A DNA stretch of 64,000 nt from Octopus sinensis. Its lineage: Eukaryota. The stretch covers positions 128,216,001 through 128,280,000 of the forward strand of contig NC_043001.1 of NCBI RefSeq assembly GCF_006345805.1, given 5' to 3'. Under the pieces are notes generated by a model. That model was not told the origin of the DNA. It saw nothing but the letters and a program-made list of their open reading frames with translations, and ran no database searches. This document shows, in pieces, positions 6,816 through 61,550 of this stretch (position 1 is the stretch's first letter; every line of letters starts with the position of its first letter). A program made the position numbers and the translations under genes.

Positions 6816-7535
6816 GCGGGTGTTACTATGAAAATTTACCTACGTGGACCTAAGTACCAGTTAAACACTGGATTGATGTAATCAATCTCCCACCTCTCCG
6901 AAATTGCTGGCTTTATGCCAAAACTCAAAACGACTAAAACAATTTTTTCTTAACTCTAATAATCAACATAAGCATGACTTTTTCGAAACCAACGTTAGCA
7001 ATTCTTCAGAGGTATTTGAAACTTAAACGAAAGCTGTTGTAAGAAGCTTCAAAATAAAACTTATTCAAGTAGCTCTGATAATAAACTAAAAACAAAAATA
7101 ATACAACGTAAATATGAGATTTATAAAGAAACAGTAATATTGTGATTTCTTTGTTGGCATGACACTCTTTTACTCTCTTTTACTTGTTTCAATCATTTGA
7201 CTGCGGCCATGGGATATGCACTCACATAGCATGGACTGCTAAGCACATTTTATGAAAATGAGACTACCATGCTCACATAAAAAACCAAAAAATAGTCAAA
7301 ATATCTTCTTAGTATATAATGGTGGCAAGTTTTACTTTACATCATCTGAAAAGTCATAGGTGACATTAGACCCCAACAAACGCCCATAAGTTATGATAAA
7401 CCATAAAGGGTTTGATATAAAAGACAATCTGAGTAATGTGACTGAAGAAATGAGTGACTATTGTACAGTTTGTATCAAAGAAATGCAGTAACAGGGATGA
7501 CTAATTTTCCAAGTCATCAAGTAGGAAAACATTAT

Positions 7536-10994: not shown

Positions 10995-11205
10995 CTGGCA
11001 GAAACTTCAGCATGCCGGGTGAAATGCTTAGCAGTATTTCTTCTGTATTTATGTCCTGAGTTCAAATTTTGCCGAGGTCGACTTTGCCTTTTATCCTTTT
11101 GGGGTTGATAAATTAAGTTCCAGTTGCGTACTGGGGTCAATCTAATTGACTGCCTCCCCACCCCACCCTGAATTTCAGGCCTTGTGCCATGAGTAGAAAA
11201 GAATT
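10995..11205 (+). mobile_element. SINE family 2 variant
   Basis: agctggcagaaac...gagttcaaattttgccgaggtcgactttgcc...tactggggtcaatc. Confidence 0.75.
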
Positions 11206-18196: not shown

Positions 18197-19510
18197 ATTT
18201 GCTAAAAATAGTTGCCAAATTCTCTCAGATCACACCACACCATCTTAAGGAAGGGAGGACGCTTTAGCCAAGGTATTAGATATGCAGAAAGGTGGAATGG
18301 TTATTTTAAAAACATCTTTGTAGGATAAATATTTTCATTCTATGTTGATTTAGGGGTTAGATAATAACAGAATTTTTGAAATTGACATGTATTTTGTTTG
18401 TAGTTCCAACTTCCTCCATAGCATAAATCTACCTACCTGGTTGTTTGACTTGCAAAAAGTAGCAGGTAAATTCTTTGAATTACACTCCATTTAAAGAAAG
18501 AAAGCGATGCACTGAACAATGTAGACCTTGATATATAGAGGAAAACAGGATGGTCACAGCTGGAATGATTTTGAGCATATTTACAATCAGTCGGGATTTG
18601 AGCAAGTACTTTGTTAAGGCAGTAAGTTAGTTTGGTGAGGTAACAATGAGTAGTACTAGGTATAGGTAGGTATTAAAGTTATTACGATTTTAGTAACATT
18701 GGAAACAAGGCTCTTGATGTTCCTGTTTCAGTAACTGAGATTTATTGGTATTGGTGGTAGTAGTGATGTAGCTAAGACTTAATATAAACCAGTGATATAA
18801 TTTGAGTCCACTTACATATAGGAATACTAGAATGGTTTGAAATTTGGTTAGACTGTAAATTGGAGAAATTTTTTTTTCGGCAGTCTCATTGTAACCATGT
18901 TGTTTCAAAATTTAAGGTTGATAACTTCTGGTAGGGTTGGGGCATGTGTAAAAGTACATGTGGAGCTTCTGTTTGCACTATACTAATTGTAATAATTCTT
19001 TGAACTATAGGCACAAGGCCTGAAATTTTATCGAGGAGGCATTGATTGCTGTGCTCAACTGGTACTTATTTTATTGACCCCAAAAGGTTGAAAGACAAGG
19101 TTCACCTTGGCAGAATTTGAACTCAAGACATAAACCAGAAGAAATGCTGCTAAACATTTTGTCTGGCATGCTAATGGTTCTGCCAACCCGCTGCTGCTAA
19201 TGATAATAGTAATCCTTTCTACTATAGGCACAAGGCCTGAAATTTGGTGGGATTAGATCGACCCCAGTACGCAACAGGTTCTTAATTTATTGACCCCGTA
19301 AGGATGAAAGGCAACGTCGACTTAAGCAGAATTTGAATTCAGAACATAGAAACGGGTGCTAATAACAATAATGATTTTAAATTTTGCCAGAGCAAAAATG
19401 TCACTGAAAATAATGTGCTTATTATATACAGTGTTCAGATGTACTACTTAATTACGATGAAAAATATTTGCTGTGAGGTCGTGTGTTGAAGCAGAGGTGG
19501 ACCTAAAGTA

Positions 19511-20869: not shown

Positions 20870-21305
20870 GTTGCACATTGCATTTAAGAAGCCTAGTTGC
20901 ATCTTACATTTTGGCGCTTTAGAACTTGGACCACGGGCTATACGTCCCCTGCCCAATTCAAGATCACAACATACATGTACACTGCAACATAATTTCTTTT
21001 CCTCAACAGGCCCAGCCCTATTTAACATTGTCCCGAGGGAGATCAAAGAGGAAAAGGATCCCATCAACTTTAAACAGAGTCTGGATAGATTCCTTCAAAG
21101 AATACCAGATAAGCCACCCATAATTGGATACAACTCACCCAACAAGAACTCACTACTTGAACAAAACTGGATACAACTCACCCAACAAGAACTCACTACT
21201 TGAACAAAACTTGACTTAAACAGGATTCGAATAATCCTATCAGGTGGTGCTATTAAGTTAGACATGGCCTGGACCAATCTTTGGTCGAAACATATCTAAG
21301 TTTAT
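20870..21305 (+). mobile_element. CR1-like LINE 3' end (RT C-terminus plus 3'UTR) with an internal 43-bp tandem duplication
   Basis: ORF 20871-21203 FFSSTGPALFNIVPREIK...FKQSLDRFLQRIPDKP...NKNSLLE; 21125-21167 is duplicated at 21168-21210. Confidence 0.75.
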
Positions 21306-21309
21306 CTAA

Positions 21310-21527
21310 CCCTTTAGCATTCATATTACTCTCTTAAATGAAATGCTTATTTATTCACAGTTTTGAATTAATCATGCTTTACCTCGTAGGCAAGACATTT
21401 TCATGATCTGATTGCTTAGTTTTAGAAAGACGTTGTAGTAAAGGTGTAAGAGGCCAGATCTGGTCAGTTTTAACATAAAACTGGTTGCATATTTAGTCTG
21501 GATGTGGCCAGTTTGAATGCTAAAGAG
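21310..21527. mobile_element. piggyBac-type MITE (ccctttagc family), diverged
   Basis: CTAA|ccctttagcattc ... gaatgctaaagag|TTAA. Confidence 0.7.
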
Positions 21528-21871
21528 TTAAACCTATTTTACGAAATATTTGAGTTGCTAATCTCTAAAATGATGTTTTGCCCAATCTGGTCTAATTAGT
21601 TAATGATCTGCTAGTTAGTTACAAAAATAACAATATTAATGTTATTAATATATTGTTTCTAAATTTGACACATGACCAGCAATTTTGGGGGGAGGGGTAA
21701 AATTGATAACATCAACCCCAGTACTAGACTAGTACTTTATTTTATTGGTCCCGAAAGGGTGAAAGGCAAAATTGATCTTGGCAGGATGTGAACTCAGAAT
21801 GTAAGAAGCTAGAAGAAATACTGCTAAGTATTTTGTCTAAGATGCCGACAATTCTTGCAGCCTTAAATAGT

Positions 21872-22045
21872 TTCATCATCATCATCATCATTTAGCGTCC
21901 GCTTTCCATGCTAGCATGGGTTGGACGGTTCAACTGGGGTCTGGGAAGCCAGAAGGCTGCACCAGGCCCAGTCTGATCTGGCAATGTTTCTACGGCTGGA
22001 TGCCCTTCCTAATGCCAACCACTCGTGAGTGTAGTGGGTGCTTTT
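21872..22045 (-). mobile_element. RTE 3' tail fragment
   Basis: (CAT)n tail and consensus ccatgctagcatgggttggacggttcaactgggg. Confidence 0.8.
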
Positions 22046-22221
22046 ATTTCAACATAAAAGCTTAGAGTAAAGATATTGTGAAATGAAGATGAAATGAAAA
22101 GTACCAAAAATCATTTGTACTTAGAGAATTATGTGAATTATGTAAATTGAATGAAAGACAAAAATTAATAACGAGAACTCAAAGAGTACAAACCTCTGCC
22201 AAGGCAACACCAACATCCTCA

Positions 22222-23470
22222 TTTTTTTATTGCCCACAAGGGGCTAAATATAAAGGTTATACAATACAAAGCATAAAATCGGGGAAATTAAAATATAAAA
22301 AAGAAATCAAGCAAAGAAGAAAAAAATAAAAGAAACAAATAAACTTATGAATAATGATAAAATGAGGCGCAATGCTCACTTGACCCCTGAAGTCAAGTGG
22401 TTACATTTAGACATGATTTTGGACAGTTTTTCCTCTTTTTTTCTTTTCTTTAAAAAGTTCGCATTTTCATAATTTTTTTTTATATTGTTCATATTACATT
22501 TAATATTTTTGTCTGAAATTTTCAAACTTTGCATGTTCCACTACGAGCGGCATTGCATTATACAACACCAGCCCATCAATCATAGTTATCAATTCATCAT
22601 AAGAATCCATGAACACTTCATATCTTTCGTTGTTCAATAGAACGCATCTTTCATTCTCCTTGAAATTCTCCCTGGGTAGCTTCATCCTAATCAAATCCTT
22701 CCACTTGGATATTCTTCTTTCTACCTCTACACTCTTTACATAGTAAACACGTTCACTCCTCCCACCGGTGCCAACTCTGGACTGTCCCCAGTGGCAGCCG
22801 AAATAGCTGCCACCAACCACTCTGTACCCATTTCAGGCGGCACTCCTCCCATTCAAATTCGAACACCTTGCCTGCCCCCACACATGGGCAGCAGCACTAC
22901 CATGTCCAAACATAGAACAGTGGTGGAGTGTGCGGCTGCCTCCTCTTTGGTGGCAAACCTGACATCCACCGCACCGCACTTCCTTCCTCCGCTCACAAAA
23001 GTCACCCTCCTCATTAGGGCTCCCAGACACTCCTCCATATCATCCTCCAAGAGGACCTCCACTTTGTTGGTGGCGACTACCCTTGTATGTCACACCACCG
23101 TCCATTGCTCCCATCAGTCACAGTTTCCTCAGGAGGGACCTGCTCAGCTGTGTCTCCGTTTCCTTTCACAAACTGCCTGCCTCCTACAACCTCTTCCATA
23201 TCAACTTTTAACCGCTTTGCCTCCAGCGGTGCAGCTGCTCCCACTGCTGTGGTCCCTCAGCACCCCTCCATAATAAAAGCTAATTTTTTCTCACCCACAA
23301 TGGGGAGAAAAACAGCAAAAAGCAACTATGCGCAAGTCGCTTCAACAATTTTTAACTGTAATAAAAACAATATATTCAACAGACAGTCTCAAAAAGACAA
23401 CCTTCCACAATCAAATCATAGTAAAAAATGACGAGACTCAAACAACAAGTTGTAAAACTAATGTCCTAAT
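22222..23470 (-). mobile_element. ORF1/gag-only retroelement A (RRM-like region, internal deletion, C-terminal domain), decayed
   Basis: Broken frames KVEVLLEDDMEECL...GRKCGAVDVRFATKEEA..HST...GGVPPEMGTEWLVAAI align with element B; the ORF ends at 22500; the 3' end has a stem-loop and AATAAA at 22226-22244. Confidence 0.7.
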
Positions 23471-25743
23471 TTCTTTTATTAGGAACAAGCCCTCTTATAA
23501 AGATGGGACAATACAAAGACAGACAAAACAATACAGAGGGGTACACAAAACATAACGAATGAAATTATTTACCTGCCCCCTCCCTCCACACAAGCAGGCA
23601 GTTCCATTTTACTGTTTATGTATCACACAGTTCATTCTTGTTTTTTTTTCTCTTTCCATCATTAAGTCCTTATTTAAAAATCTTAAATATCTCACTTACT
23701 TTCCTTTATATTAGATATTCCACTATGTCTTCAAATGCCACCACTGGTGGCAACTCTTTGACTCTAAACTGTAACGGTGATATCTCTATCATTTCCCCAA
23801 ATAGTTCCTTCAACTTTTCACCTTTCTCTCTTACAAGCGAGACCACTTTAAAACCTTCATTGCACGGTTTAGGCGCTAACTTCACCCTAATTACATTTTT
23901 CACTTTCATGACTTTGTTTTTTCAGTTTCTACCTTTTCTTCTGTACTGTATCATAGTTCTTACTTGTTTTCCCTTCAGTGATACTTTCTGATTTCCATCA
24001 CTAATCTCTTCTGCTGTTGTTGGTATTTCCATCTCTTCCTTCCCTGCTTGTCTCTCGCTCGATGTTGTTGTCATTTCTCTTCTATACTCTTTTACTCTTT
24101 TCAGTCATTTGACTGCGGCCATGCTGGAGCACCGCCTTTAATTGAGCAACTCGACCCCGGGACTTATTCTTTTGTAAGCCCAGTACTTATTCTATCGGTC
24201 TCTTTTGCCGAACCGCTAAGTAACGGGGACATAAACACACCAGCATCGGTTGTTAAGCAATGCTAGGGGGACAAACACAAACACACACACGCATATATAT
24301 ATATACATATATACGACGGGCTTCTTTCAGTTTCTGTCTACCAAATCCACTCACAAGGCTTTGGTCGGCCCGTGGCTATAGTAGAAGACACTTGCCCAAG
24401 GTGCCACGCAGTGGGACTGAACCCGGAACCATGTGGTTGGTAAACAAGCTACTTACCACACAGCCACTCCTGCACCTATGTTCCTTTTTTCCTGTCTTTT
24501 TACTTTCTCCTCCGTGCTAATTCCTGGTATTGCTCTCTGTTTTCTGTCTTTGTCTTTCTCGCTTAATTTTGCCATCTAGTTTCTTTTCTACTCGTTCGAT
24601 TTTCCTCCTTTTGGTAACCCTTGTCTCTCCTCTACACTTCCTTTTCTTTTCTTCATGGGACTCTTTGGTGGTGAGTCCAAGTTTTCTTGTCTTTTCTTCC
24701 TCTTCACCACTGTGTATCTTTCTTCCATATTTTCCAGTGACCTCTACTTCTCTATGCCTTGCACGTCTACCTCTTCTCACTGTTCCATCTCCGTCACTTT
24801 CTCGTCATGTTTCTGAGGACACTTAGCTTTCATGTGACCCCGTACTCCACATTGATAGCATATGGGAGGTCTTCCTTCCACTACGACTCTCAGCTTTGTC
24901 TCATCCGGCAACACCAATTCCTCTGCAATTTTGTGAAGGTCTGGTAAACTAATGTGAACCGACACCTCAAGGCCGTATTCCCATCAGTTTACCTCTGTAG
25001 TTCTTGTAATTTTCAGTATTTTGGTTTCCTCTTCTGTATTATAGAGGATGGCTGCCACCAGCCACGCCTCGTCAAGTTCTGGTGGCATTCTACCAATCCT
25101 TCCTCCAGCCGCACGTTTGCCACAGTATGTTGGTTGCAGCACACACTCAGTTGATCTCAAAGGCACAGTGGAGTGTTTTATCGCTTCTTGTTCACTAGTG
25201 AAGCATACCTCCACTGTGCCGTATTTCTTTCCTCTGGTGTAGTACGTCATTAGATCTTTGACATCTCTCAAGCATTCTTTGACTGCTTCTACTGCAGCTA
25301 TTTCAACTCTTTTTATTGCAATAGACAGCATTCCGTATATAACTGTCTTTCTCTCTGTCTTTTCAATAACTTCTTTAGTTGGCGTCAGCCTCAAGCTGTC
25401 TCCTTCCTTTCTCAATAGTTGATTGTACTTCTTGAAGATTGTTTCTTCCAGTTGAATTTCTCTAACTTTCAAGACATCCGCCGTAAGACTTTTCCCAGTC
25501 ACTGCAGTGTAACTGCCTGCTGGAACTGGTTGACATTCCATAACGATATTATCCACAACTTCACCCATAAATGGGGAAGAAAAGTAAAAGTTCAGGTAAC
25601 AATAAATTCAACAATTCACTAATGTAACAATTAGGTGCGATAGAATTTCTACAATTCAAACGACAACAAGACTTACATGAAGCGAACACACATTAAATGC
25701 AACAGGGAATCAGATGACTCGACACAACACCAACGTCCTGATT
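23471..25743 (-). mobile_element. ORF1/gag-only retroelement B (RRM-like region, CCHC zinc knuckle, K/E-rich linker, C-terminal domain); no RT or endonuclease
   Basis: ORF 24984-25568 continues past a stop into 24777-24965 with CYQCGVRGHMKAKC (CX2CX4HX4C). After a SINE insertion it ends ...ELPPVVAFEDIVEYLI* at 23706, followed by a ~235-nt 3'UTR with AATAAA at 23475-23480. Confidence 0.8.
24085..24476 (-). mobile_element. SINE family 1 inserted in element B
   Basis: Near-consensus full copy. Confidence 0.9.
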
Positions 25744-25838
25744 GCTTTTATTTGGCACAAGGCCTCTTATAAAGAGGGGACAATACAAAGACAGACAAAA
25801 CAATACAGAGGGGTATACAAAACATATAATGGATGAAA

Positions 25839-26226
25839 TCTTTATATATAAAAGTCAAGTTGTATGTCTGTCTCCTACGATTTAGATTCCTAACTACTCC
25901 CACATTTTGCGGTGCAGTGTAACCAAAACCGGGTATCTTATAGTCGTGATTCATATCGAGCCCTTCTGGGTATTAGTGCGCGTCTACGACTTAAAAAAAA
26001 ATTTACCATCATTTTTTTCCATTTTAATGCATTTTTTTCGCTATTATATAAGGGAAGTAACTCTCTAAAAATGTCTACGATGAGTCAACGATTTAAAAAA
26101 AAAATTACCATAATTTTTTTTCCATTTTTAATGCATTTTTTTGCTATTTTTTGGCTATAACTCTCTAAAAATGCTTATATAGTTATTTCCCTTACAAACC
26201 CTAGCAACGCTGGGCGATACTGCTAG
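25839..26226 (+). mobile_element. Non-autonomous Helitron
   Basis: A|TC 5' end, subterminal hairpin ccctagcaacgctggg, CTAG|T 3' end, no TSD; the empty site atgaaa|ttat is seen in element B. Confidence 0.88.
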
Positions 26227-26384
26227 TTATGAATAAATTATAAATGAGATGAGATGGCTTACCTGCCCACCCCCCCAAGCAGGCAGTTCCATTTTACTGT
26301 TTATGTCTCACACAGTTCATTATTCTTTTTCATTTCCATCATTTTTTAAAAAGTCCTTATTTTAAAATTTTAAATATTTCAGTT

Positions 26385-26746
26385 AAATCGAAATCGATCA
26401 ACATCAATGGAAATTGCAGCTGTGATACTAGTGCTAGTGGCACGTAAGTGAATCATCCGAACGTGGCCGTTGCCAGTGCCGCCCCGACGGGCCTCTGTGC
26501 TGGTGGCACGTAAAAAGCACCATCCGACTGTGGTGGTTTGCCAGCCCCGTCTAGCACCTGTGCCAGTGGCACGTAAAAAGCACCCACTACACTCACGAGT
26601 GGTTGGCATTAGGAAGGGCATCCAGCCATAGAAACATTGCCAGATCAGACTGGGCCTGGTGCAGCCTTCCGGCTTCCCAGACCCCAGTCGAACCATCCAA
26701 CCCATGCTAGCATGGAAAGCGGACGCTAAATGATGATGATGATGAT
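26385..26746 (+). mobile_element. RTE 3' fragment inserted in element C
   Basis: ggcacgtaaaaagcac subrepeats and (GAT)n tail. Confidence 0.8.
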
Positions 26747-27004
26747 TCCACTATGTCCTCAAATGCCACCACTGGTGGCAACTCATTGAATCAAAACTGC
26801 AGTGGCAACATCTCTATCATTTCCCCGAACAGCTCCCTCAACTCCCCACCCCTCCACTTCACAAGCAAGACTGCCTTTAATGAAGAATGAGGAAAATAAA
26901 AATGTAAATTTTCAAGTAGAGTTCTTCCATTAATGCAAGGAACTGGTAAATTCTTTGATGTGGGAATTTTTCTTTCTCAATGCTGCATTAAATATAATCT
27001 GATA

Positions 27005-27427
27005 TACTCTCTACTCTCTACTCTTTACTCTTTTACTCTTTTACTTGTTTCAGTCATTTTGACTGCGGCCATGCTGGAGCACCGCCTTTAGTCAAGCAAA
27101 TCGACCCCGGGACTTATTCTTTGTAAGCCCAGTACTTATTCTATCGGTCTCTTTTGCCGAACCGCTAAGTGACGGGGACGTAAACACACCAACATCGGTT
27201 GTCAAGCAATGTTAGGGGGACAAACACAGACACACAAACACACACATACATATATATACATATATACAACAGGCTTCTTTCAGTTTCCATCTACCAAATC
27301 CACTCACAAGGCATTGGTCGGCCCGGGGCTATAGCAGACACTTGCCCAAGATGCCACGCAGTGGGACTGAACCCGGAACCATGTGGTTGGTTAGCAAGCT
27401 ACTTACCACACAGCCACTCCTGCGCCT
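27005..27427 (-). mobile_element. SINE family 1, full length
   Basis: Consensus head and (ctcttttact)n tail. Confidence 0.9.
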
Positions 27428-27699
27428 ATATATATTTTTTATTTTATTTATATATATATTTTTATTTATATATATTTTTTATTTTATTTTCTGTATTTCC
27501 TGATGCCAATACAAATTGTTATTGCTTCTAGACTGTGTGAACTAACAAGAGATCCTCTATATGGTGATTTGATCTGTTAGAAATAACACCAAAACTCACC
27601 TTTATTCACACCTAACTATTTTAACCCTTTAACATTAAAATTCTTCGGTCACATTTAATGTTTATAGAATGTTTTAAATTAATCATGCTTTATCTTATA

Positions 27700-28035
27700 A
27701 AGACCCCCTTCAGTCATGAACAACCATGGGATTGTACCTAGAAAGTTACCATTCAAAGCACTAGTCTGGGCAAGGTTGTTTATGGAAGACCAGCAGTCGC
27801 CCATGCATACCGGCCTCCCCTCTCCACGCCACCAGTGTTATCCAAGGGAAAGGCAAAGGCCAATACTGCTTGGCACTATTGACATTGCAACTCATTTCTA
27901 CAGCTGAGTGAACTGGAGGAACGTGAAATAAAGTATCTTGCTCAAGAACACAACACACATCCCAGTCCAGGAATTGAACTCACTATCTCATGATTGTGAG
28001 CCTGACGCTTTAACCACTGAGCCATGCATCTTCAC
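27700..28035 (-). mobile_element. tRNA-derived SINE (core H1, tail W)
   Basis: Reverse complement gcatggctcagtggtt...gagttcaattcc...tgttcttgagcaagatactttatttcac; sister copy at 55570-55905. Confidence 0.8.
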
Positions 28036-28124
28036 ATGCGTCACCTTATAGCTTCATGATTTCAATGATGTGATTATTTATTTTTAGAATGACATTATAG
28101 GGTAGGTGTGAGAGGCTGGATATT

Positions 28125-28546
28125 CTCTTTTCTCTTTTACTCTTTTACTTGTTTCAGTCATTTGACTGTGGCCATGCTGGAGCTCCGCCTTTAATCGAGC
28201 AACTCAACTCCAGGACTTATTCTTTTGTAAGCCCAGTACTTATTCTATCAGTCTCTTTTGCCGAACCGCTAAGTAACGGGGACATAAACACACCAGCATC
28301 GGTTGTCAAGCAATGCTAGGGGGACAAACACAGACACACAAACACACACACATACACACACATATATATATATATACATATATACAACAGGCTTCTTTCA
28401 GTTTCCGTCTACCAAATCCACTCACAAGGCATTGGTCGGCCCGGGGCTATAGCAGAAGACATTTGCCCAAGATGCCTTGCAGTGGGACTGAACCTGGAAC
28501 CATGTGGCTGATTAGCAAGCTACTTACCACACAGCCACTCCTGCGC
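28125..28546 (-). mobile_element. SINE family 1
   Basis: Consensus match. Confidence 0.88.
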
Positions 28547-28714
28547 CTGGTTGGTTTCAATATAAGATATTTAGAATTTTTGAACTGGATATGATAAGTT
28601 TAAATGCTAATGAGTTAAAATTGGAGAAGGACATGTTACTGGATAATGTAGACCTAGAAATACAAAAAGAAAAGGATTGCCTAATTATGCAACGGGTTTT
28701 TATGGTCTCCAGAC

Positions 28715-29110
28715 AGAGAGCTTACTTTTTTACTCTTATACTTGTTTCAGTCATTAGATTGCGGCCATGCTGGAGCACCGCCTTTAGTCGACCAAATCGA
28801 CCCCAGGACTTATTCTTTGTAAGCCTAGTGCTTATTCTATAGGTCTCTTTTGCTGAACCGCTAAGTTACAGGGACATAAACACACCAGCATCGGTTGTCA
28901 AGCGATGTTGGGGGGACAAACACAGACACACAAACACACATATATATATACATATATACGATGGGCTTCTTTCAGTTTCCGTCTATCAAATCCACTCACA
29001 AGGCTTTGGTTGGCCTGAGGCTATAGTAGAAGACACTTGTCCAAGGTGCCATGCAGTGGGATTGAACCCGGAACCATGTGGTTGGTAAGCAAGCTTCTTA
29101 CCACACAGCC
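28715..29110 (-). mobile_element. SINE family 1
   Basis: Consensus match. Confidence 0.85.
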
Positions 29111-30054
29111 ACAAAATGATTCTTATTTCATAGGGTCAATGTATGACACTGAGTCCTGTACATGGCCTTCATTTGTTTTATTGGTCAAAAACTATTTTGG
29201 CATGTATCAAACAGACAACTACTCCGAATTAGTAGCAGACGCAATCTTTTACCCTGTTACTTGTTTCACTCATTGGATTATTTCCATGCTGGTATGCTGC
29301 CTTCTGGAGTTAGTCAAAACAATTTGACCCCAATACTTATTTTTGAGTCTACTACTACTACTACTACCACCATTACCACCACTACTACTACTACTATCAT
29401 CACCACCACCAGCAGCAACCGTTCAAGAATTTGGACCTGGAGATCTCCATTTCCAGCGACTTCGAGGGCCACCTCCCAGTGGTGTCAGGCATCAACGAAG
29501 AGCCCTCGATTACAACAAGACAACCAAAGTTTTTTTTTCAAGGTCTGGGGTCTCCCACCCCTAAGCCCTAGACCATCACCTAATCACCCTTAACCGTCTT
29601 GTTGCTTAACAACAGCAGCAGCAGCAGAACCACTACCACCACCACAGCCATCGTCCCTATTTCCACGCTTTAAAAACTGCTGAATTATTTAAATACACTA
29701 AAACAAAGTAAAAGGAAATAAAATGGAATTATCCTTAAAAAGGCTTTTCCTTAATATCTCCTGTCAACAATAAAAAGTTTGTTCCTCTACTTAATCGTAT
29801 AGAAAGACAAAGTATGTTTAAAACAAACAATGCTATAACTGTTTCATATCGGATGTTAATCCTCTGTAATTTCCTCCTGTTAGTTGGAGACAAGCCTGAT
29901 AAACACTTAAATAATCGCATTAAGTACACATGTATTTTCATAACAGTGTGGTAAGAAGTTGTTTCCCAATGACATGGTTCTAGGTTCAGTCCATACTGTA
30001 TAGCACCTTGGGCAGGTGTCTTCTACTATAGCCTTAGGCTGACCAAGGCCTTAA

Positions 30055-30276
30055 CCCTTTAACATTTAAACCGGCCATATCCGGCCAAAAGTATTCTGCC
30101 TGTTTTATGTTCAAACTGGCCAGATCTGGTCTCTCACACCAACCCTACAATATCATTTTAAAAATTAACAGCTACCTCATCAAAATCTCAAAGCTACAAG
30201 ATAATGCCTGATTAGTTCAAGGCAATGTGGATAAAAAAAGGATTAATTTTGGCAGAATAATGCGAACACTAAAGGG
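30055..30276. mobile_element. piggyBac-type MITE inserted into a + strand SINE family 1 fragment (about 29945-30300)
   Basis: TTAA|ccctttaac ... cactaaaggg|TTAA; SINE sequence resumes on both sides. Confidence 0.85.
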
Positions 30277-30611
30277 TTAATGGAAACTGAAAGAAACCCA
30301 GCATGTATGTTTACAGGGTTGGCCAAAAGTCAGCTGACAGTAAATCAAAACCATTTAATTCCAAGATTTATTTATGTTTAACATCTGAATGAATTGAAAA
30401 TTGTCCAACACATTTTTCCATTCAAGTCAATACAGAATTACAGATAATATTTATGGAAATTTGATTTACTGTCACATGACTTTTGGCTAACCTGTATGTA
30501 TGTGTATGTATATAATGGGAAGGTTTATGAAAATAAACAAAAGACGAAGGCAGGTGGAGTACAAACAAACAAATGTATTAGTATGGCGCTCAGGAGTAGA
30601 AATAGAACAAG

Positions 30612-30649
30612 TCTTTTACGTTTCGAACCTACGCTCTTCGACAGAAAGA
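30612..30649 (-). ncRNA. Minimal hammerhead-like motif, A6U variant
   Basis: Reverse complement tcttt CTGTCGA A gagc gtag gttc GAAA CGTA aaaga. Confidence 0.4.
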
Positions 30650-30814
30650 TATGCAGAAAAGAAACAAGGAGAGAAAAAAAAGCGTGTAGGAGCTAAATAT
30701 ATATATATATATATTAGACATATATATATATATATATATATATTAGACATATATATATATATTAGACATATATATGTATATATATTAGACACATATATAT
30801 ATATATAGATATAT

Positions 30815-31510
30815 ATCATCATCAACATTTAATATCCTTTGGCCATGGGTTGAACAAGCTGGCAAGCTGAAGGGCAGTACCAGACTCCAGTCTGATTTGG
30901 CATGGTTTCTGCGGCTGGATGCTCATCCTAATGCCAACCACTCCAAGAGTGTAATGAGTGATTTTACATGCCACTGGCATGGGTGCCAATTGTGTTACAC
31001 TAGTACCTGCTACAACTACGATTTCACTTGGCTTGACGGTTCTGCTACTCAAGCATGGCATGTTGCCAAAAGTTTTGGTCATTTGTCATTGCCTCTGTGA
31101 GGCCCAATGCTTGAAAGTGTTTTTTACGTACCACCAGCACAAGGTGCTAGTTACACGAGAATGGCATCAGCCACAGGGCCTCTATGTGGCCCAACACTTG
31201 AAAGGTGCTTTTTACATGCCACTGGCATGGGTGCTACCTATACAACACCAGTGTCAGCCACATTGCTTCTGTGAGGCCCAACACTTGATAGGTGGTTTTT
31301 ACATGCCACGACTATGATTTCACTTGGTTTGACAGGTCTTCTGAAGCGTGGCATATCACCAAAGGTCTTGGTCACAAGCCATTGCCTCTGTGAAGCCAAA
31401 TGTTCGAAGATCATGCTTCACCACCTCCTTCCATGTCTTCTTGGTTCTATCTCATCCACAGGTTCCCTCTAGTTAGAGATTGGCACTTCACGCAATTGTC
31501 CTCATCCATA
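30815..31510 (-). mobile_element. RTE LINE 3' end (ORF C-terminus, long 3'UTR, (GAT)n tail)
   Basis: Reverse-strand translation EGTCG*DRTKKTWKEVVKHDLRTFGFTEAMACDQDLW resembles the RTE C-terminal GRPRKTW motif. Confidence 0.8.
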
Positions 31511-31514
31511 TACA

Positions 31515-32507
31515 TCACAAATTTATAAGGCCATGAGACTGGAGAGAAGTTGTCTTATCGTGCATCAGATTGTTAAAGGCATGCTGTCCAACCTGGTGTT
31601 CACTGCTGGGAAGAAATTTGACATTGAACAAATAGTAAACCATCAGAATGACTGACTTTGGAGTGTATGTGGCTCCATCAAAGGTAGACTCATAAATAAA
31701 CTGCTGTAACAGCCACTGGAAGGTCTCCCCTTGTTTTTGTGCCCTCGGGGTTTTAAAATTAACACCCAGCAACATTTTGGAAGCTGAACTGCTTCCATGG
31801 GCAAATGATCACTTTCAAAGCACACCTTGCAGCCTCCAACAGGACATGGCATCAAACAGACACAGCACTTGATTCAGTAAAACAGTACATCGTTCATAGG
31901 CAAGTATGTATGGTCCTTAAGAAGCCCCAATCTCAATCTGTTGGATTTTTCTGTTTGATCCATTTTGGAGATGAGGGTCTTGAGTACTCCTCATGCTTTG
32001 CTTGATGTTCTGAAGGCAAAACTGTGTCAGGAATGGGCTTCAATGGCGGCGAGCTGGCAGAATTGTTAGGATGCCGGGCGAAATGCGTAGCGGTATTTCG
32101 TCTGCCGTTACGTTCTGAGTTCGAATTCCGCCGAGGTCGACTTTGCCTTTCATCCTTTCGGGGTCGATTAAATAAGTACCAGTTACGCTCTGGGGTCGAT
32201 ATAATCGACTTAATCCGTTTGTCTGTCCTTGTTTGTTCTCTCTGTGTTTAGCCCCTTGTGGGTAGTAAAGAAATAGGAATGGGCTTCAATTCTGCAAGAG
32301 CAGCTGTGTGCCACATGTGAAGCATTCATACCTAGACTTACAGCTGTGATTTGAAACAGAAGTGGTCATATCAAATATATGTGGTAGTGTCATAATTGTG
32401 GTTCCTTTACCATTGCATTGCATTGCAATGCTTAGACCTGAAATATAACAATAGTTTACTTTGGCAAAATTGAAAAAAGTTGGTTGTCTTAATTTTGGGA
32501 CACCCTG
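31515..32507 (+). pseudogene. IS630-Tc1-mariner (maT/DD37D-like) transposase remnant with right TIR
   Basis: NLVFTAGKKFDIEQIVNHQND, LQQDMA, SPNLNLLDFSV*SILE, LKAKLCQEW; ends ttttgggacaccctg|TA; subfamily assignment is inference. Confidence 0.75.
32045..32274 (+). mobile_element. SINE family 2, full length, 16-bp TSD
   Basis: TSD aggaatgggcttcaat at 32029-32044 and 32275-32290. Confidence 0.93.
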
Positions 32508-34352: not shown

Positions 34353-35002
34353 TAACTATATCTAGCATGAAAATCTGCTTCTAACTAGGTTGCCTTTCTC
34401 TGAGCTTCAACTCTGTCTTACTTCTTAGATTAGAATTTCCCTGTCAAATCTTAACTGCTGCAGAAGTTGATAATATCATCTCCTTAAGCTTCTGTCAATT
34501 TTTGTGCAATCACAAATCTGTTGTTTCCTGCACTTTTCCTTCCACACATTATCCTTTTGGTATTAACCCGCCCAAGCCACTCCTGGTTCTCCGATGCAAT
34601 GTTCCTGGTTTAAAATCATCTAAATGACATCCTGCAATGAAAATTTCCTGTTAAATTATATTTCAAATGTCAGCTTAATAATGACAGTTATTTTACTAAA
34701 TACTTCATTATTTTCAAATTTAGTTCAGACAGTTTCTTTAGAAACATGGCAATAAAAGGGTTAAAGACCAGATTTTACTTCTAACTTTACTCACACTAAT
34801 GTAGATGATATCACTCTTTGCTCATCCTTAACCATCCTTATATGGGCATCAGCGACATATAATGTACACACCTCATGTCAAATCTACACTACATCCATAA
34901 ACATTAATCTGAGAAACATTTTTCACTGAATACATGAAAAAACTACTCTCCTTCAACAGCACTACTACATGCAATAATTACATATGTGAAAGAGACAATT
35001 TG

Positions 35003-44000: not shown

Positions 44001-44754
44001 CAAATGTTAGGCTTTTGGGTATTACCCTTGGGGTTGCTACAAATGTTAGGCTTTTGGGTATTACCCTTGAGGTTGCTACAAATGTTAGGCTTTTGGGTAT
44101 TACCCTTGGGGTTCTACAAATGTTAGGCTTTTGGGTATTACCCTTGGGGTTGCTACAAATGTTAGGCTTTTGGGTATTACCCTTGAGGTTGCTACAAATG
44201 TTAGGCTTTTGGGTATTACCCTTGAGGTTGCTACAAATGTTAGGCTTTTGGGTATTACCCTTGGGGTTGCTACAAATGTTAGGCTTTTGGTATTACCCTT
44301 GGGGTTGCTACAAATGTTAGGCTTTTGGGTATTACCCTTGGGGTTGCTACAAATGTTAGGCTTTTGGGTATTACCCTTGGGGTTGCTACAATGTTAGGCT
44401 TTTGGGTATTACCCTTGAGGTTGCTACAAATGTTAGGCTTTTGGGTATTACCCTTGGGGTTGCTACAAATGTTAGGCTTTTGGGTATTACCCTTGGGGTT
44501 GCTACAAATGTTAGGCTTTTGGGTATTACCCTTGAGGTTGCTACAAATGTTAGGCTTTTGGGTATTACCCTTGGGGTTGCTACAAATGTTAGGCTTTTGG
44601 GTATTACCCTTGGGGTTGCTACAAATGTTAGGCTTTTGGGTATTACCCTTGAGGTTGCTACAAATGTTAGGCTTTTGGGTATTACCCTTGGGGTTGCTAC
44701 AAATGTTAGGCTTTTGGGTATTACCCTTGGGGTTGCTACAAATGTTAGGCTTTT
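35003..44754. repeat. 39-bp tandem satellite, about 250 copies (gggtattacccttg[g/a]ggttgctacaaatgttaggctttt)
   Basis: Continuous array of 9752 bp; 13-aa periodic ORFs (LLGITLGVATNVR etc.) reflect the 39-bp unit. Confidence 0.99.
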
Positions 44755-46248: not shown

Positions 46249-46481
46249 AAGGTGGCGAGCTGGCAGAAACGGTAGCACGCCGGGCGAAATGCGTAGCCGT
46301 ATTTCGTCTGCCGTTACGTTCCGAGTTCAAATTCCGCCGAGGTCGACTTTGCCTTTCATCCTTTTGGGGTCGATAAATTACGTACCAGTTACGCACTGGG
46401 GTTGATGGAATCGACTTAATCGCTTTGTCTGTCCTTGTTTGTCCCCTCTGTGTTTAGCCCCTTGTGGGTAGTAAAGAAATA
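46249..46481 (+). mobile_element. SINE family 2, full length, 16-bp TSD, nested in a SINE family 1 fragment
   Basis: TSD tatatattcctggatt at 46233-46248 and 46482-46497. Confidence 0.92.
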
Positions 46482-46799
46482 TATATATTCCTGGATTGAC
46501 CAAAGCCTTCTAAATGGATTTGGTAGGTGGAAACTGAAAGAAGCTCATCATATGTGTGTGTGTGTACATATGTGTGTTTGTGTGTACTCTTCTCTTGACA
46601 TCATGGTTGTAAACAAGCATCACTGTCATACAAGCGGTGTTGTTCATTTCTAGCCTTCAATGAAAAAAAAAAAATGTATGGCCATGGGATAACATGAAGC
46701 CGCTTGGAAACAGCTAAGTTCATACAGTCATAGAAAATCTGCCTCAACAAATTCAATTTAACCCAATGTAAGCATGGAAAAGGGGGCACTAAACAAAGA

Positions 46800-51662: not shown

Positions 51663-52553
51663 TGCTCTTTCTGTGCAGTGCCCCAACATGGCCACAGTCC
51701 AGTGACAAAAACAACTAAAAGAATCAAAGAACTCTATATCATATCATCGATATTTTCTGTTTCTGAGATGGTGAGCTGGCAGAAATGTTAGCACACCATG
51801 GAAATGCTTAGCGGTATTTTGTCTGTCATTATGCTCTGAGTTCAAATTCCGCTGAGGTCAACTTTGCCTTTTATTCTTTTGGGGTCAATAAATTAAATAC
51901 AAGTTGTGTACTGGGGTCAATCTAATTGACTGGCCCCCTCTCCCAAAATTTTGGGCCTTGTGCCTAGAGTAGAAAAGAATATTTTCTGTTGTTGTATATT
52001 TCAGCTCACTATAACATGACAATACTCAGAATTCCAACTGAGATTTTATAAAAAAATACAGAAAAGTTAAATATATATTTATGAAACAAAGCCAAGTTGA
52101 ATGAAATACGAAAAGAACATTTATAGTTAAAAAGAGAAAAAGAAAAAACTTTTCAAGATATTTTTGTAATGGTATATAAATTGCTGAATGAAAAAAAAGA
52201 AGAGCAAAAAGGATGAAGGAAAGATAAATGATGGATTTAATTTAACAGAAAATCTGAAAAATACCATTGTCTTCTGTTTTAACAAATAAGGGAGAAGAAA
52301 GAGTAAAACAAGGAGGGAGAAGAGAGAGACTGAGAGAGATTCAAAGCAAAATTGACAAAAACAGAAGAGAGAGAGAGAGAGAGAGGAGAGAGTATTTCTT
52401 TATTCACCATAAGTTTGAGAAAAAGAGGGGACAAAACAAACGTTGGGGTCAGGGTATCGAATGAGACGAAACGTATGAATAAACAAACAATTAAAATATA
52501 TACAATTAAATGAGAATGAGTGAATAACAAAAAATGAAGCGGAGGACGTAGTT

Positions 52554-52594
<41 letters not shown>

Positions 52595-53342
52595 GAGAGA
52601 GAAATAAAGGGATTTGTGGGAAAATGGACAAACAGTAAGAAAGAAAGAGAGAAGGAACAGACAAACAGAGCAAGACAGATACACAAACAGAGAGATAGAG
52701 AGAGAGAAGGAGGGAGGGAGATTCATAGTAAAATGAACTCACACACACACACAGAGAAAAAAGCAGAGATAGGATACATAAAAAGATAGAAAGAGAGATA
52801 TTGGTTTCAAATTCTGGCACAAGGCCAGCAGTGTTGAATTCATACTTATTTTATCAACCCCCAAAAGGATGAAAGGCAAAGTCGACCCTAGCATAATTTG
52901 AACTCAGAATGTGAAGACGGATGAAATGCTGCTAAGCATTTTGCTCAGTGCAGTAACAGTTCAGCCAGCTCACCATCTTTAGAAAGAGAGATGCTGAGAG
53001 AGAAAGATGAGTGATTCAGAGGAAAATAGATGAAAGTATGATGGAAGAGAACGAAAGAGATAAAGTGTCATAACTGTTTAGGTTGGTGGGAAATTACTGA
53101 GGAATTCTTTTTCATGCAGTACATCAAGGGGTTACTGTTTTGAATCAAAGGCATTCCAGCTGTGACCATCCAGTCTTTTTCTGAGGTAAAGTGCACTTGG
53201 AATTGTATGTGTGTATGTCTATGAATAAACACATACACACGCATGTGCACACACACACACACGCATGTGAACACACACACACACCACACAGAGGAGCAGG
53301 CATGACTGTGTGGTAAGAAGAGACAAATAGAATAGGTACCAG

Positions 53343-56667: not shown

Positions 56668-56714
56668 TTCATGATGTGTTTTATTCTGGAAAGCATTAAC
56701 TATCTAGATATCTG

Positions 56715-56932
56715 TTTCTTTACTACCCACAAGGGGCTACACACAGAGGGGACAAACAAGGACGGACAAACGGATAAACTCGATTACATCAATCTCAGTG
56801 CATAACTGGTACTTAATTTATCGACCCCGAAAGGATGAAAGGCAAAGTCGACCTTGGCGGAATTTGAACTCCAAACGTAACAGCAGACGAAATACGGCTA
56901 CACATTTTGCCTGGCGTGGTAACATTTCTGCC
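56715..56932 (-). mobile_element. SINE family 2
   Basis: tttctttactacccacaaggggct tail and aaagtcgaccttggcggaatttgaac body. Confidence 0.85.
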
Positions 56933-57309
56933 ACTACAGAGTGGTTGGCATTAGGAAGGGCATCCAGCTGTAGAAACTTTGCCAGATCAGATTGGAGTCT
57001 GGTGCAGCCTTCTGGCTCGCCAGTCCTCAGTCAAACCATCTAACCCATGCCAGCAAGGAAAGCAGACGTTAAACGACAATGATGGTGATGATGATGACAG
57101 GTTTCTTTCAGTTTCTGTCTACCAAGTTTTCTCACAAGGCTTTGGTTGGTCTGAGGCTATAGTACAAGACACTTGCCCAAGGTGCCTTACAGTGAGACCG
57201 AACCAGGAACTATGTGGTTGAGAAGCAAGCTTCTTACCACACAGCCACGTCTGTGCCTATATATTAAATATATATATGTGTATGTGTGTGTGTATATATA
57301 TATATATAT

Positions 57310-60834: not shown

Positions 60835-61550
60835 AGAAAATGACTCTCCCCAGACACAATAGAATTATTGTAATGTGTCCAAAGAAAAAATGAAAAACAT
60901 CTACAATGATATCTTAGCTAAGATAAGGGAAAACCAAATGCTAAGAGAGAGTTACTTATTATTGTCAAAGGTGCCACATAATACTGAACCATGCATACTT
61001 CCCAACTATACAGCCAACCTGTTCCTAATGGGCAGGAGAAATAGTGTAGCAAAAATGAAAGGGATTGAGTATTGGAGAGATGAGAGTATGTTGCATAGGT
61101 CCAGAGATGTCCCAAGTTATATTGGTTTCAAATTTTGGCACAAAGCCAGCAATTCCAGGGAAGTGGGTAAGTCAATTATACCCACCCCACTTCTCAAATG
61201 GTATTTATTTTATCAAACCCGAAAGGCTGAAAGGCAAAGTCAACCCCAGTAGAATTTCATTCCAGTTCACCAAAGCAATGTGATTTTGATTGAACTCTCT
61301 ATGCCATATGAAAGTAGAATAGAAGAAATACGTGTTCAAGACCACTCTGGCCAACTTCCAGGCCAAGGTTCTTCTTATAAAGGTTGAAGCCAGAGGTTTT
61401 GTGGGCAAATCTGCTTACTATCTAATGAAATAATTCTCAGTCTCTGGAAGGAACAGGACCAAAGCCCTAAAGGCTATATCAAAGACAATGGGGAGTTGTT
61501 CCAGCTGAATCTGGTCGAGGAACCCCCAAAACGTCCTCCATACCGTTTTA
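60835..61550 (+). pseudogene. Restriction-like endonuclease non-LTR retrotransposon remnant (HERO/NeSL/R4-like), split by a SINE family 2 fragment (about 61125-61262)
   Basis: Broken frames RHNRII, ILIELSMPYESRIEE and KVEARGFVGKSAY match the RHN / IELTVPWE / EVGCRGF motif order of RLE domains. Confidence 0.65.

What the first reader, a model, noticed from the sequence alone, without database searches (positions are those of the whole stretch)
22226..32274. Covarying CUUGU stem-loop shared by the gag-only elements and SINE family 2
Just before the A-rich end, every element has loop CTTGT closed by a different but complementary stem: A gccc/gggc (22232-22244), B aggg/tcct (23481-23493), C ggc/gcc (25754-25764), SINE2 gccc/gggt (32251-32263, 46457-46469, 56725-56737). 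SINE2 and A share tttagccccttgtggg exactly, with about 60 nt of alignable tail. Established knowledge: stringent LINE/SINE partners share a 3' stem-loop recognised by the RT. Inference: the SINE and the gag-only family parasitise one autonomous LINE not present in this window.
Basis: partly seen in the sequence, partly recalled or inferred. Interest (0 to 1): 0.75.

Follow-up and report, generated by a model that had tools for sequence, protein, structure and literature searches.

The report
Shared LINE/SINE 3' hairpin in octopus
A tiny RNA hairpin near the 3' end is shared by an octopus jumping gene (a LINE), by its shortened gag-only copies and by several SINE families, and it is probably the tag the LINE's reverse transcriptase uses to pick RNAs to copy; this is a clear new example of a well-known arrangement.

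Summary
All six hairpins sit at the stated coordinates.

The same module (4-bp stem, loop CUUGU, 11-17 nt before a 3' end in ...AAT/(ATT)n) also closes two more tRNA-SINE tail types in the window. It recurs in Octopus bimaculoides, O. sinensis, O. vulgaris and Argonauta hians loci.

Covariation holds on three alignments:
- 20 tails: 93.8% of cells paired.
- 33 tails: 92.4% paired.
- 14 family representatives: 96.4% paired.
- Controls: about 66% in shuffles and 21-51% in slid registers. All four pairs show double-sided changes.

The refuting condition is not met. Autonomous LINEs with ORF1 homologous to the window's gag, APE, RT and zf-RVT end in this hairpin (L003, L005, L008). The O. vulgaris one carries SINE2's exact stem, GCCC/GGGU. 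No ORF2 of this family lies in the window.

The gag-only units are ORF1-only non-LTR elements. A solo copy has a 16-bp TSD and a poly(A) tail.

Correction: in the window, units C, B and A are joined head to tail, so the sequence after each "A-rich end" is the next unit's 5' terminus, AGGAYRTT. The autonomous LINE also forms such arrays.

Recognition by the RT is inferred, not shown. This is a new member of a known kind, of moderate interest.

The parts
22232..22244 (-). Hairpin of gag-only unit A: GCCC-CUUGU-GGGC
   Evidence: in the MFE fold
23481..23493 (-). Hairpin of gag-only unit B: AGGG-CUUGU-UCCU (innermost pair G.U)
25753..25765 (-). Hairpin of gag-only unit C: (A)GGC-CUUGU-GCC(A), 3 bp plus an A.A mismatch
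22221..23468 (-). gag-only unit A. Full 5' terminus tAGGACATT, degenerate ORF1 (about 23110-22539), tail ending ...AAAAAAAT
23469..25740 (-). gag-only unit B, full length. 5' terminus cAGGACGTT; ORF1 25568-24780 (1 stop) with a CCHC knuckle; C-terminal domain 23975-23709; interrupted by an unrelated SINE at about 24080-24480
25741..26895 (-). gag-only unit C, 5'-truncated. Retains only the end of ORF1 (26889-26746), the 3'UTR and the tail; interrupted by a SINE (about 26385-26742) and another repeat (about 25850-26215)
22166..22220 (-). Fourth 5' terminus (gAGGATGTTGGTGTTGCCTTGGCAGAGG...) directly after unit A's tail. About 50 nt are homologous to a solo copy in O. sinensis (L003 minus strand 17007-16960, 87.5%)
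32045..32274 (+). SINE2 copy 1. Hairpin 32251-32263, ends ...GAAAT. 16-bp TSD AGGAATGGGCTTCAAT at 32029-32044 and 32275-32290
46249..46481 (+). SINE2 copy 2. Hairpin 46457-46469. 16-bp TSD TATATATTCCTGGATT at 46233-46248 and 46482-46497
56714..56934 (-). SINE2 copy 3. Hairpin 56725-56737. No TSD found; the 5' end abuts another repeat
11177..11189 (+). Hairpin AGGC-CUUGU-GCCA of a SINE with tail type 1a (...tatagtagaaaagaATT)
19009..19021 (-). Hairpin AGGC-CUUGU-GCCU, SINE tail type 1a
19226..19238 (-). Hairpin AGGC-CUUGU-GCCU, SINE tail type 1a
51953..51965 (+). Hairpin GGGC-CUUGU-GCCU, SINE tail type 1a. 12-bp TSD ATATTTTCTGTT
52815..52827 (-). Hairpin UGGC-CUUGU-GCCA, SINE tail type 1b (...agaatttgaaaccAAT). 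13-bp TSD ATCTCTCTTTCTA
61136..61148 (-). Hairpin UGGC-UUUGU-GCCA, SINE tail type 1b
21666..21678 (-). Hairpin UGGU-CAUGU-GUCA, decayed SINE tail type 1b; every pair is kept, two of them as wobble pairs
6908..6920 (+). Hairpin UGGC-UUUAU-GCCA, decayed SINE tail type 1b

Best explanation
The CUUGU hairpin is the conserved core of the 3' tail of one family of octopod non-LTR retrotransposons. These elements have an ORF1 'gag' with a CCHC knuckle, and an ORF2 with an APE endonuclease, an RT and a C-terminal zf-RVT. They look L1/Tx1-like.

Three kinds of passenger carry the same tail:
- the autonomous LINE itself;
- ORF1-only ('gag-only') derivatives that keep the LINE's 5' terminus (AGGAYRTT) and 3' tail but have lost ORF2;
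- at least three tRNA-SINE tail types.

Proposed mechanism, inferred by analogy with stringent LINE/SINE pairs. ORF2p binds the small hairpin (4 bp, loop C-U-U-G-U) in cis or in trans. It then starts target-primed reverse transcription 11-17 nt downstream, at the terminal AAU/(AUU)n, which anneals to the nicked A/T-rich target. This gives 12-16 bp TSDs and, often, (ATT)n microsatellites at the 3' junction.

Shown here: shared tails, covariation, TSDs, and the existence and coding capacity of the LINE.
Inferred: that the RT reads the hairpin, and that SINEs and gag-only units are mobilised in trans.
For: Anatomy. Twenty tails in the window, L001 and L002, and 40 across all loci, share stem-CUUGU-stem. 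The loop is CUUGU in 26 of 40, and 13 different fully paired 4-bp stems occur.

Covariation:
- A6: 93.8% paired against 65.7% shuffled (0 of 500 shuffles reach it); slid registers 31-51%.
- A8, 33 tails: 92.4% against 66.1%.
- A10, one sequence per family, gapless: 96.4% against 66.6%. Pair 11-19 is CG:8 and GC:6 with no mismatch.
- Thirteen G.U cells would be A.C mismatches on the opposite strand, so the structure belongs to the sense RNA.

Autonomous partners:
- L003, L005 and L008.
- The L008 tail is 87.8% identical to SINE2's over 41 nt.
- The RT is closest to human L1 ORF2p, E 7e-43, against 1e-22 for R2.

Non-LTR mode of insertion:
- 16-bp TSDs flank two SINE2 copies, 12-13 bp TSDs flank two other SINE copies, and a 16-bp TSD plus poly(A) flanks the solo gag-only element in L001.
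- Unit C is 5'-truncated.

(ATT)n follows about 10 of 40 tails and flanks L003 on both sides.

The hairpin is in the MFE fold of 7 of 10 tails.

Precedent: molluscan SINE/CR1 and SINE/L2 tails with stem-loops and compensatory changes (PMC4824008), and ORF1-present non-autonomous LINEs such as HAL1, HeT-A and Ag-Sponge (PMC5786205).
Against: - The helix is only 4 bp. Folding energies of 56-nt tails do not differ from shuffles (z from -1.8 to +0.6).
- In the B, C and L003 tails the MFE fold prefers another pairing.
- One Argonauta LINE copy has loop AGGU, and L006 is degenerate.
- Copies within a family are not independent, and 13 of the 33 tails in A8 were found with a model that rewards pairing.
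- No autonomous copy was seen with the GGC/GCC or AGGG/UCCU stems.
- The solo gag-only copy ends in poly(A), so poly(A)-based ('relaxed') priming cannot be excluded for that class.
- There are no binding or retrotransposition data.
Confidence: 0.75

Rival explanations
1. The conserved element is a linear sequence motif (CCTTGTG plus the A-rich end) read as single-stranded RNA or as DNA. The flanking complementarity is then inherited palindrome plus chance, not a selected hairpin.
For: The stem is only 3-4 bp and folding energies match shuffles. The loop and the innermost C-G pair are nearly invariant (CG 13 of 14). Related sequences can beat shuffles without any structure (tool caveat).
Against: The two middle pairs flip C-G to G-C in 6 of 14 and 3 of 14 family representatives with no mismatches. 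The outer pair takes four standard pair types. Slid registers, which preserve relatedness, give only 21-48% paired. Wobble pairs are strand-specific.
Confidence: 0.12
2. The repeated roughly 100-nt segment is an LTR, or a Penelope-type pseudo-LTR, of an LTR-like or PLE element. The gag units would then be internal regions of such elements, not LINE derivatives.
For: The segment lies between successive gag ORFs in direct orientation. It contains a TATA-like box and AATAAA, like a U3-R-U5.
Against: - Solo copies have the tail at the 3' end only, plus a 16-bp TSD and poly(A).
- Units B and A are only about 35% identical in protein.
- The full-length relative encodes APE, RT and zf-RVT with no integrase, protease or GIY-YIG domain.
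- Rfam finds no hammerhead ribozyme.
Confidence: 0.03
3. The tails are shared only because SINEs and gag-only units captured them by template switching or recombination. Mobilisation is 'relaxed', primed on the A-rich or poly(A) end, possibly by a different LINE, and the hairpin has another role such as 3'-end processing or RNA stability.
For: The gag-only and LINE tails carry AATAAA right after the hairpin, and L001 ends in A12. Other LINE clades are present in the window.
Against: SINE tails lack AATAAA and poly(A), yet they keep the hairpin at the same distance from the 3' end across three tail types and two genera. They end precisely at ...AAT/ATT before the TSD.
Confidence: 0.1

Closest known systems
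Stringent-type LINE/SINE pairs with a common 3' tail: eel UnaL2/UnaSINE1 and tortoise CR1/PolIII-SINE (from my own knowledge of Ohshima, Okada and Kajikawa); molluscan BivaV-SINE2 and BivaCORE-SINE1 with CR1-14_CGi (PMC4824008)
   Same: A SINE and a LINE share the last roughly 40-60 nt. A stem-loop with compensatory changes lies a short distance upstream of a short-repeat 3' end. Several SINE families use one LINE tail.
   Different: The helix here is only 4 bp with a 5-nt loop. The partner looks L1/Tx1-like rather than L2 or CR1. The terminal repeat is (ATT)n. An ORF1-only LINE derivative shares the tail as well.
ORF1-present non-autonomous LINEs: HAL1 (half-L1), HeT-A, Ag-Sponge (listed in PMC5786205)
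   Same: These elements keep the 5' end, ORF1 and 3' end of an autonomous LINE but lack ORF2/RT, and presumably use the partner's ORF2p in trans.
   Different: This is an octopod-specific family. By source names, all named relatives of the gag are from Octopus species. The units carry an extra conserved C-terminal domain after a K/E-rich linker. They occur in head-to-tail arrays at an internal chromosomal site.
Stringent L1-clade LINEs (Ohshima 2012, 'Parallel relaxation of stringent RNA recognition in plant and mammalian L1'; cited from memory) and target-specific Tx1 elements (Kojima and Fujiwara 2004; cited in PMC5786205)
   Same: APE + RT + C-terminal Cys/His domain, an ORF1 with CCHC, a conserved 3' end instead of plain poly(A), and an association with a microsatellite, here (ATT)n.
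   Different: Clade membership was not established by phylogeny here. SINE TSDs show that many insertions lie outside (ATT)n.
HeT-A/TART telomeric arrays, 'promoting in tandem' (Danilevskaya et al. 1997; cited from memory)
   Same: gag-only and autonomous LINEs are joined head to tail. A TATA-like box in the upstream unit's tail lies 31-32 nt before the next unit's first base in all three window junctions.
   Different: The location is not known to be telomeric. The TATA-like box is absent from the L008 LINE array junctions. No transcription data exist.

Membership tests
Stringent LINE/SINE pair with a common 3' tail | The SINE 3' tail is homologous to the 3' end of a LINE | tested here: met
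   The L008 LINE tail is 87.8% identical to the SINE2 tails over 41 nt; alignments.
Stringent LINE/SINE pair with a common 3' tail | The partner is autonomous (endonuclease + RT) | tested here: met
   L003 has Exo_endo_phos, RVT_1 and zf-RVT. L008 has an intact 993-aa ORF2 with RVT_1 (E 6.5e-31) and zf-RVT.
Stringent LINE/SINE pair with a common 3' tail | A conserved stem-loop with compensatory substitutions in the tail | tested here: met
   92-96% of cells paired against about 66% shuffled and 21-51% slid; 4 of 4 pairs with double-sided changes.
Stringent LINE/SINE pair with a common 3' tail | The SINE has a Pol III (tRNA-type) head and is flanked by TSDs | tested here: inconclusive
   TSDs of 12-16 bp are met. 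ARAGORN and Rfam find no tRNA. By eye, a B-box-like GAGTTCGAATTCC lies at 32117-32129.
Stringent LINE/SINE pair with a common 3' tail | The RT specifically recognises the tail RNA | not testable with these tools
   Needs a binding or retrotransposition assay.
ORF1-only non-autonomous LINE (HAL1/HeT-A type) | ORF1 is homologous to the ORF1 of an autonomous LINE | tested here: met
   Unit B gag against L003 ORF1: 38% identity over 215 aa, E 1.5e-46. Against L008 ORF1: E 3e-37.
ORF1-only non-autonomous LINE (HAL1/HeT-A type) | No ORF2/RT between the element's own 5' and 3' termini | tested here: met
   Units are 1.25-2.3 kb. tblastn of L008 ORF2 against the window finds nothing. The solo L001 element is bounded by TSDs and is about 2.1 kb.
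ORF1-only non-autonomous LINE (HAL1/HeT-A type) | Same 5' and 3' termini as the autonomous element | tested here: met
   The 5' terminus AGGAYRTT is shared by units B and A, the fourth 5' terminus (Z) and all three L008 LINE units. The 3' hairpin tail is shared.
L1/Tx1 group of non-LTR retrotransposons | APE, RT and a C-terminal Cys/His (zf-RVT) domain in ORF2 | tested here: met
   Pfam hits. The best PDB relative is L1 ORF2p, E 7e-43.
L1/Tx1 group of non-LTR retrotransposons | ORF1p with an RRM plus a CCHC knuckle | tested here: inconclusive
   zf-CCHC E 2e-4. The AF2 model is confident for residues 1-130, but Foldseek gives only weak RRM-type matches, E >= 1.7e-3.
L1/Tx1 group of non-LTR retrotransposons | RT phylogeny places it in the clade | not tested
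   No reference set of LINE RTs was available. CR1, Jockey and I clades have no PDB representative for comparison.
LTR retrotransposon or Penelope-like element (considered) | Terminal direct repeats on both sides of a solo copy, short TSDs, an integrase or GIY-YIG ORF, hammerhead ribozyme | tested here: not met
   Solo copies have the tail at one end only and 16-bp TSDs. The ORF2 domains are APE and RT. Rfam finds no ribozyme.

The most novel reading that the evidence does not exclude
The head-to-tail arrays are made by the family's own machinery. The route would be end-to-end template jumping of an RT that loads on hairpin-bearing 3' ends, or self-targeting of its AAT/(ATT)n terminus. The arrays seen are window units C|B|A|Z, at least 3 intact LINEs in L008, and a gene model (P0004) that splices across such a junction. 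Within an array, the upstream unit's tail would act as a mini-LTR: its TATA-like box at -31/-32 and its AATAAA would promote the downstream unit and terminate the upstream one. That would be a HeT-A-like 'promoting in tandem' system at non-telomeric sites in a mollusc.
Probability: 0.15. Interest if true: 0.65.

Novelty: new member of a known kind. Interest (0 to 1): 0.4.

Why it matters
SINEs make up about 12% and LINEs about 13% of the O. vulgaris genome (PMC13282606). Their activity has been tied to cephalopod genome reshuffling and neural expression. None of the octopus papers I could search names the LINE that mobilises the abundant tRNA-SINEs.

This result links at least three SINE tail types and a gag-only family to one L1/Tx1-like LINE family that has intact copies. 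It defines a 34-nt tail module that can be searched for, and it gives clear mutants to test (stem, compensatory, loop, terminal AAU). It would also be an example of stringent, hairpin-based template choice in an L1-like LINE, and it offers a tractable case of LINE tandem-array formation.

Tried and rejected
- Rfam at gathering threshold and ARAGORN on the whole window found nothing.
- Pfam on the gag pieces gave only zf-CCHC. Pfam and PDB sequence searches on the LINE ORF1 gave nothing useful.
- Exact-protein look-ups of P0003, P0004, P0002 and the window's 194-aa ORF were not on record. External DNA became reachable only through P0008, P0010, P0020, P0100 and P0037.
I therefore searched the representatives library with P0007 alone. 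It returned 226 relatives, none carrying an RT.
- The LTR or Penelope reading of the repeated segment was rejected on TSDs, poly(A) and the ORF2 domains.
- I looked for an 'orphan' tail preceded by ORF2. L002:7432 is only a severely truncated tail with no coding sequence upstream.
- I tried to extend the fourth unit (Z) beyond about 55 nt and found no gag or tail downstream.
- Extending the helix to a 5th-7th pair failed: those pairs are not conserved (by eye).
- The TATA-at--31 idea holds for the 3 window junctions but not for the L008 junctions or the solo copies, so I kept it only as the speculative reading.
- Literature searches for an octopus SINE/LINE partner or tail description found none.

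Full report
**Source and setting.** The window is octopus DNA. Every named relative of its gag ORF comes from Octopus bimaculoides, O. sinensis or O. vulgaris. The window is dense with SINEs, satellites and LINE fragments.

**Observation.**
- A: GCCC-CTTGT-GGGC.
- B: AGGG-CTTGT-TCCT.
- C: GGC-CTTGT-GCC.
- SINE2: GCCC-CTTGT-GGGT, three copies.

The 16-mer TTTAGCCCCTTGTGGG links A and SINE2: 4 matches at up to 2 mismatches, against 0.07 expected. BLAST aligns 33-36 nt between A and SINE2. MAFFT carries the homology about 55-60 nt upstream through TTTGTCTGTCYTTGT(A)TTGTCCCCTCT, where SINE2 is closest to the B and C tails.

**Anatomy of the gag region (minus strand).** The three elements are joined head to tail.
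- Unit C runs from about 26895 to 25741. It is 5'-truncated and keeps only the last roughly 50 codons of gag, the 3'UTR and the tail. Two later insertions interrupt it.
- Unit B runs from 25740 to 23469. It is full length, with an ORF1 that has one stop and a CCHC knuckle (Pfam zf-CCHC, E 2e-4). A SINE is inserted at about 24080-24480.
- Unit A runs from 23468 to 22221. It is full length at both ends, with a decayed ORF1 about 35% identical to B's.
- Directly after A's tail a fourth 5' terminus begins (22220 onwards). About 50 nt of it recur as a solo copy in O. sinensis.

Each junction reads ...hairpin-AATAAAAnnAAT | n-AGGAYRTT.... SINE2 instead stops at ...GAAAT and is followed by a TSD.

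**The gag units are non-LTR elements.** Solo copies fetched from other genomes prove it.
- The L001 element (O. bimaculoides) is bounded by a 16-bp TSD, AGAGATAGTC(A/G)TGTCT. It starts at CCAGAGTTG... and ends ...GAGC-CATGT-GCTC-ataataat-A12.
- L002 (O. sinensis) and L007 (O. vulgaris) hold further solo copies, with stems GGGC/GCUC and AGGC/GCCU.
- I considered and rejected the LTR or Penelope reading of the repeated segment.

**The module is wider than reported.** Two more tRNA-SINE tail types in the window carry it.
- Type 1a: ...tttcAGGC-CTTGT-GCCT-atagtagaaaagaATT.
- Type 1b: ...tgcTGGC-CTTGT-GCCA-gaatttgaaaccAAT.

These are documented. A covariance model built from 20 tails recovered them all. 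It also found further tails in every octopod locus fetched, including SINE2-like and other families in Argonauta hians with stems GGCC/GGCU and GGCC/GGCC. Across 40 tails the loop is CUUGU in 26, and 13 different fully paired 4-bp stems occur. The hairpin ends 11-17 nt before the 3' terminus.

**Covariation.**

| Alignment | Cells paired | Shuffled control | Slid registers | Notes |
|---|---|---|---|---|
| A6: 20 tails collected by homology, not by pairing | 93.8% | 65.7 +/- 3.7% (0 of 500 reach it) | 31-51% | covariation score 0.738 against 0.203 |
| A8: 33 model-aligned tails | 92.4% | 66.1% | 26-47% | 4 of 4 pairs with double-sided changes |
| A10: one sequence per family, gapless | 96.4% | 66.6 +/- 4.6% | 21-48% | no mismatches in the two middle pairs |

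In A10 the pair types are:
- pair 10-20: GC:10, CG:3, AU:1;
- pair 11-19: CG:8, GC:6;
- outer pair: GC, GU, AU and UA.

Thirteen wobble cells would be mismatches on the other strand, so the structure belongs to the sense RNA.

Thermodynamically the hairpin is unremarkable. It is in the MFE fold of 7 of 10 tails, but energies match shuffles. In the B, C and L003 tails another pairing is preferred. The case therefore rests on covariation, not on stability.

**The autonomous partner.** A full-library phmmer search with gag relative P0007 found 226 relatives, none carrying an RT. One of them, P0020, led to L003 in O. sinensis.
- L003 is an element of about 5.6 kb.
- Its ORF1 is 615 aa and 38% identical to unit B's gag (E 1.5e-46).
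- Its ORF2 is slightly broken and carries Exo_endo_phos, RVT_1 and zf-RVT.
- A 3'UTR follows, then ...gtgtcaGCC-CTTGT-GGCC-aataaaaagaatt, then (ATT)n. (ATT)n lies on the 5' side as well.

L005 is a contig filed under a metagenome. It shows an RT/zf-RVT ORF followed by GGCC-CTTGT-GGCC-aataaaagaaatc(ATT)n.

L008 in O. vulgaris holds at least three head-to-tail copies with a period of about 5.28 kb and about 99% identity.
- ORF1 (372 aa) and ORF2 (993 aa, RVT_1 E 6.5e-31) are intact.
- Each unit starts with AGGACGTT.
- The two tails seen (the third unit runs into an assembly gap) read ...gtcccctctttgttgGCCC-CTTGT-GGGT-A-rich. That is SINE2's stem, and the tail is 87.8% identical to SINE2's over 41 nt.

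An Argonauta relative (RT 64% identical) has GCC-AGGT-GGC in one copy and GGCC-CTTGT-GGCT in an adjacent truncated copy. The RT is closest to human L1 ORF2p among solved structures (E 7e-43, against 1e-22 for R2). No ORF2 of this family is in the window.

**Mechanism.**
- Shown: one LINE family, its ORF1-only derivatives and several SINE families share a 3' module whose helix is maintained by compensatory change. Insertions have 12-16 bp TSDs, 5' truncation, and often (ATT)n at the 3' junction.
- Inferred, from the stringent LINE/SINE model and its molluscan CR1 and L2 examples (PMC4824008): ORF2p binds the hairpin and primes on the terminal AAU/(AUU)n.
- The gag-only units fit the 'ORF1-present non-autonomous LINE' class of HAL1, HeT-A and Ag-Sponge (PMC5786205).
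- SINE tail types match different subfamilies. SINE2 matches L008 and unit A; type 1a matches L007. This suggests repeated tail exchange within the family.

**Arrays.** Head-to-tail joining exactly at 3' end | 5' end recurs.
- In the window (C|B|A|Z), the most upstream unit is the truncated one.
- In L008, the two junctions differ in the A-rich stretch far more than the 1% seen elsewhere between units.
- Gene model P0004 fuses a gag C-terminal domain to a gag N-terminus.

This fits end-to-end template jumping, or self-targeting of the AAT/(ATT)n end. I could not discriminate between the two. A TATA-like box lies 31-32 nt before each downstream unit's first base in the three window junctions. 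It is absent from L008, so 'promoting in tandem' remains speculative.

**Verdict.** This is a well-documented new member of a known kind. I found no paper describing it, though repeat libraries may already hold the consensus sequences. RT recognition itself is untested. Interest is moderate.

Noticed in passing
window 22166-26895 (-); L008 4445-19184: gag-only units in the window, and intact autonomous LINEs in O. vulgaris, are joined head to tail exactly at 3' end | 5' end (AAT|nAGGAYRTT). The most upstream window unit is 5'-truncated. The two L008 junctions differ in their A-rich stretch much more than the units differ elsewhere.
   Followed up: partly
window 25765-25771, 23493-23499, 22245-22252 (-): TATA-like boxes (TATAAGA, TATAAGA, TATATTTA) lie 31-32 nt upstream of the first base of the next unit in all three array junctions. 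In B and C they form a competing CCUCUU/AAGAGG-type hairpin. They are absent from solo copies and from the L008 junctions.
   Followed up: partly
L003 9723-9778 and 15347-15380; L005 2020-2105; L002 about 4420, 7680, 8190: (ATT)n microsatellites directly follow many tails and flank the L003 LINE on both sides. This suggests either insertion into (ATT)n or growth of (ATT)n by RT slippage.
   Followed up: partly
window 34999-44754: A 39-bp satellite with about 252 copies at 96% identity and strong GC/AT skew. It generates many spurious long ORFs.
   Followed up: no
window 63092-64000: A 30-bp tandem repeat with higher-order periods of 75 and 105 bp runs off the end of the window.
   Followed up: no
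window 1-1330 (-): The 5' part of an unrelated LINE. An APE-type endonuclease ORF (301-804) has no gag upstream and continues out of the window. tblastn with this family's ORF2 does not hit it.
   Followed up: partly
window about 20900-21211 (+): By eye, the C-terminal end of another LINE ORF2, followed by a perfect 43-bp x2 tandem repeat (21125-21211). It has a different tail with no CUUGU hairpin.
   Followed up: no
window about 21300-21535: By eye, a MITE-like element with terminal inverted repeats (aaccctttagcattca ... tgaatgctaaagagttaaacc).
   Followed up: no
window about 24080-24480 and 26385-26742, 21873-22050: Other abundant SINE families are inserted into units B and C and just downstream of the fourth 5' terminus. 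One has CCTTGGGCAAG (CORE-like); another starts (CAT)n-TTAGCGTCCGCTTTCCATGC. Their tails lack the CUUGU hairpin.
   Followed up: no
P0158; L005 (JGI 3300045642); L006 (ENA ERZ25513664): Octopod LINE ORF2 sequences, 67-79% identical to L003, are filed under metagenomes. In one case the record is labelled a 'Herbaspirillum sp.' MAG protein. This is probably host DNA in microbiome assemblies.
   Followed up: no
P0004 (O. bimaculoides gene model): The predicted protein fuses a gag C-terminal domain to the N-terminus of another gag. This is what a gene model spliced across a tail/5'UTR junction of a tandem pair would produce.
   Followed up: no
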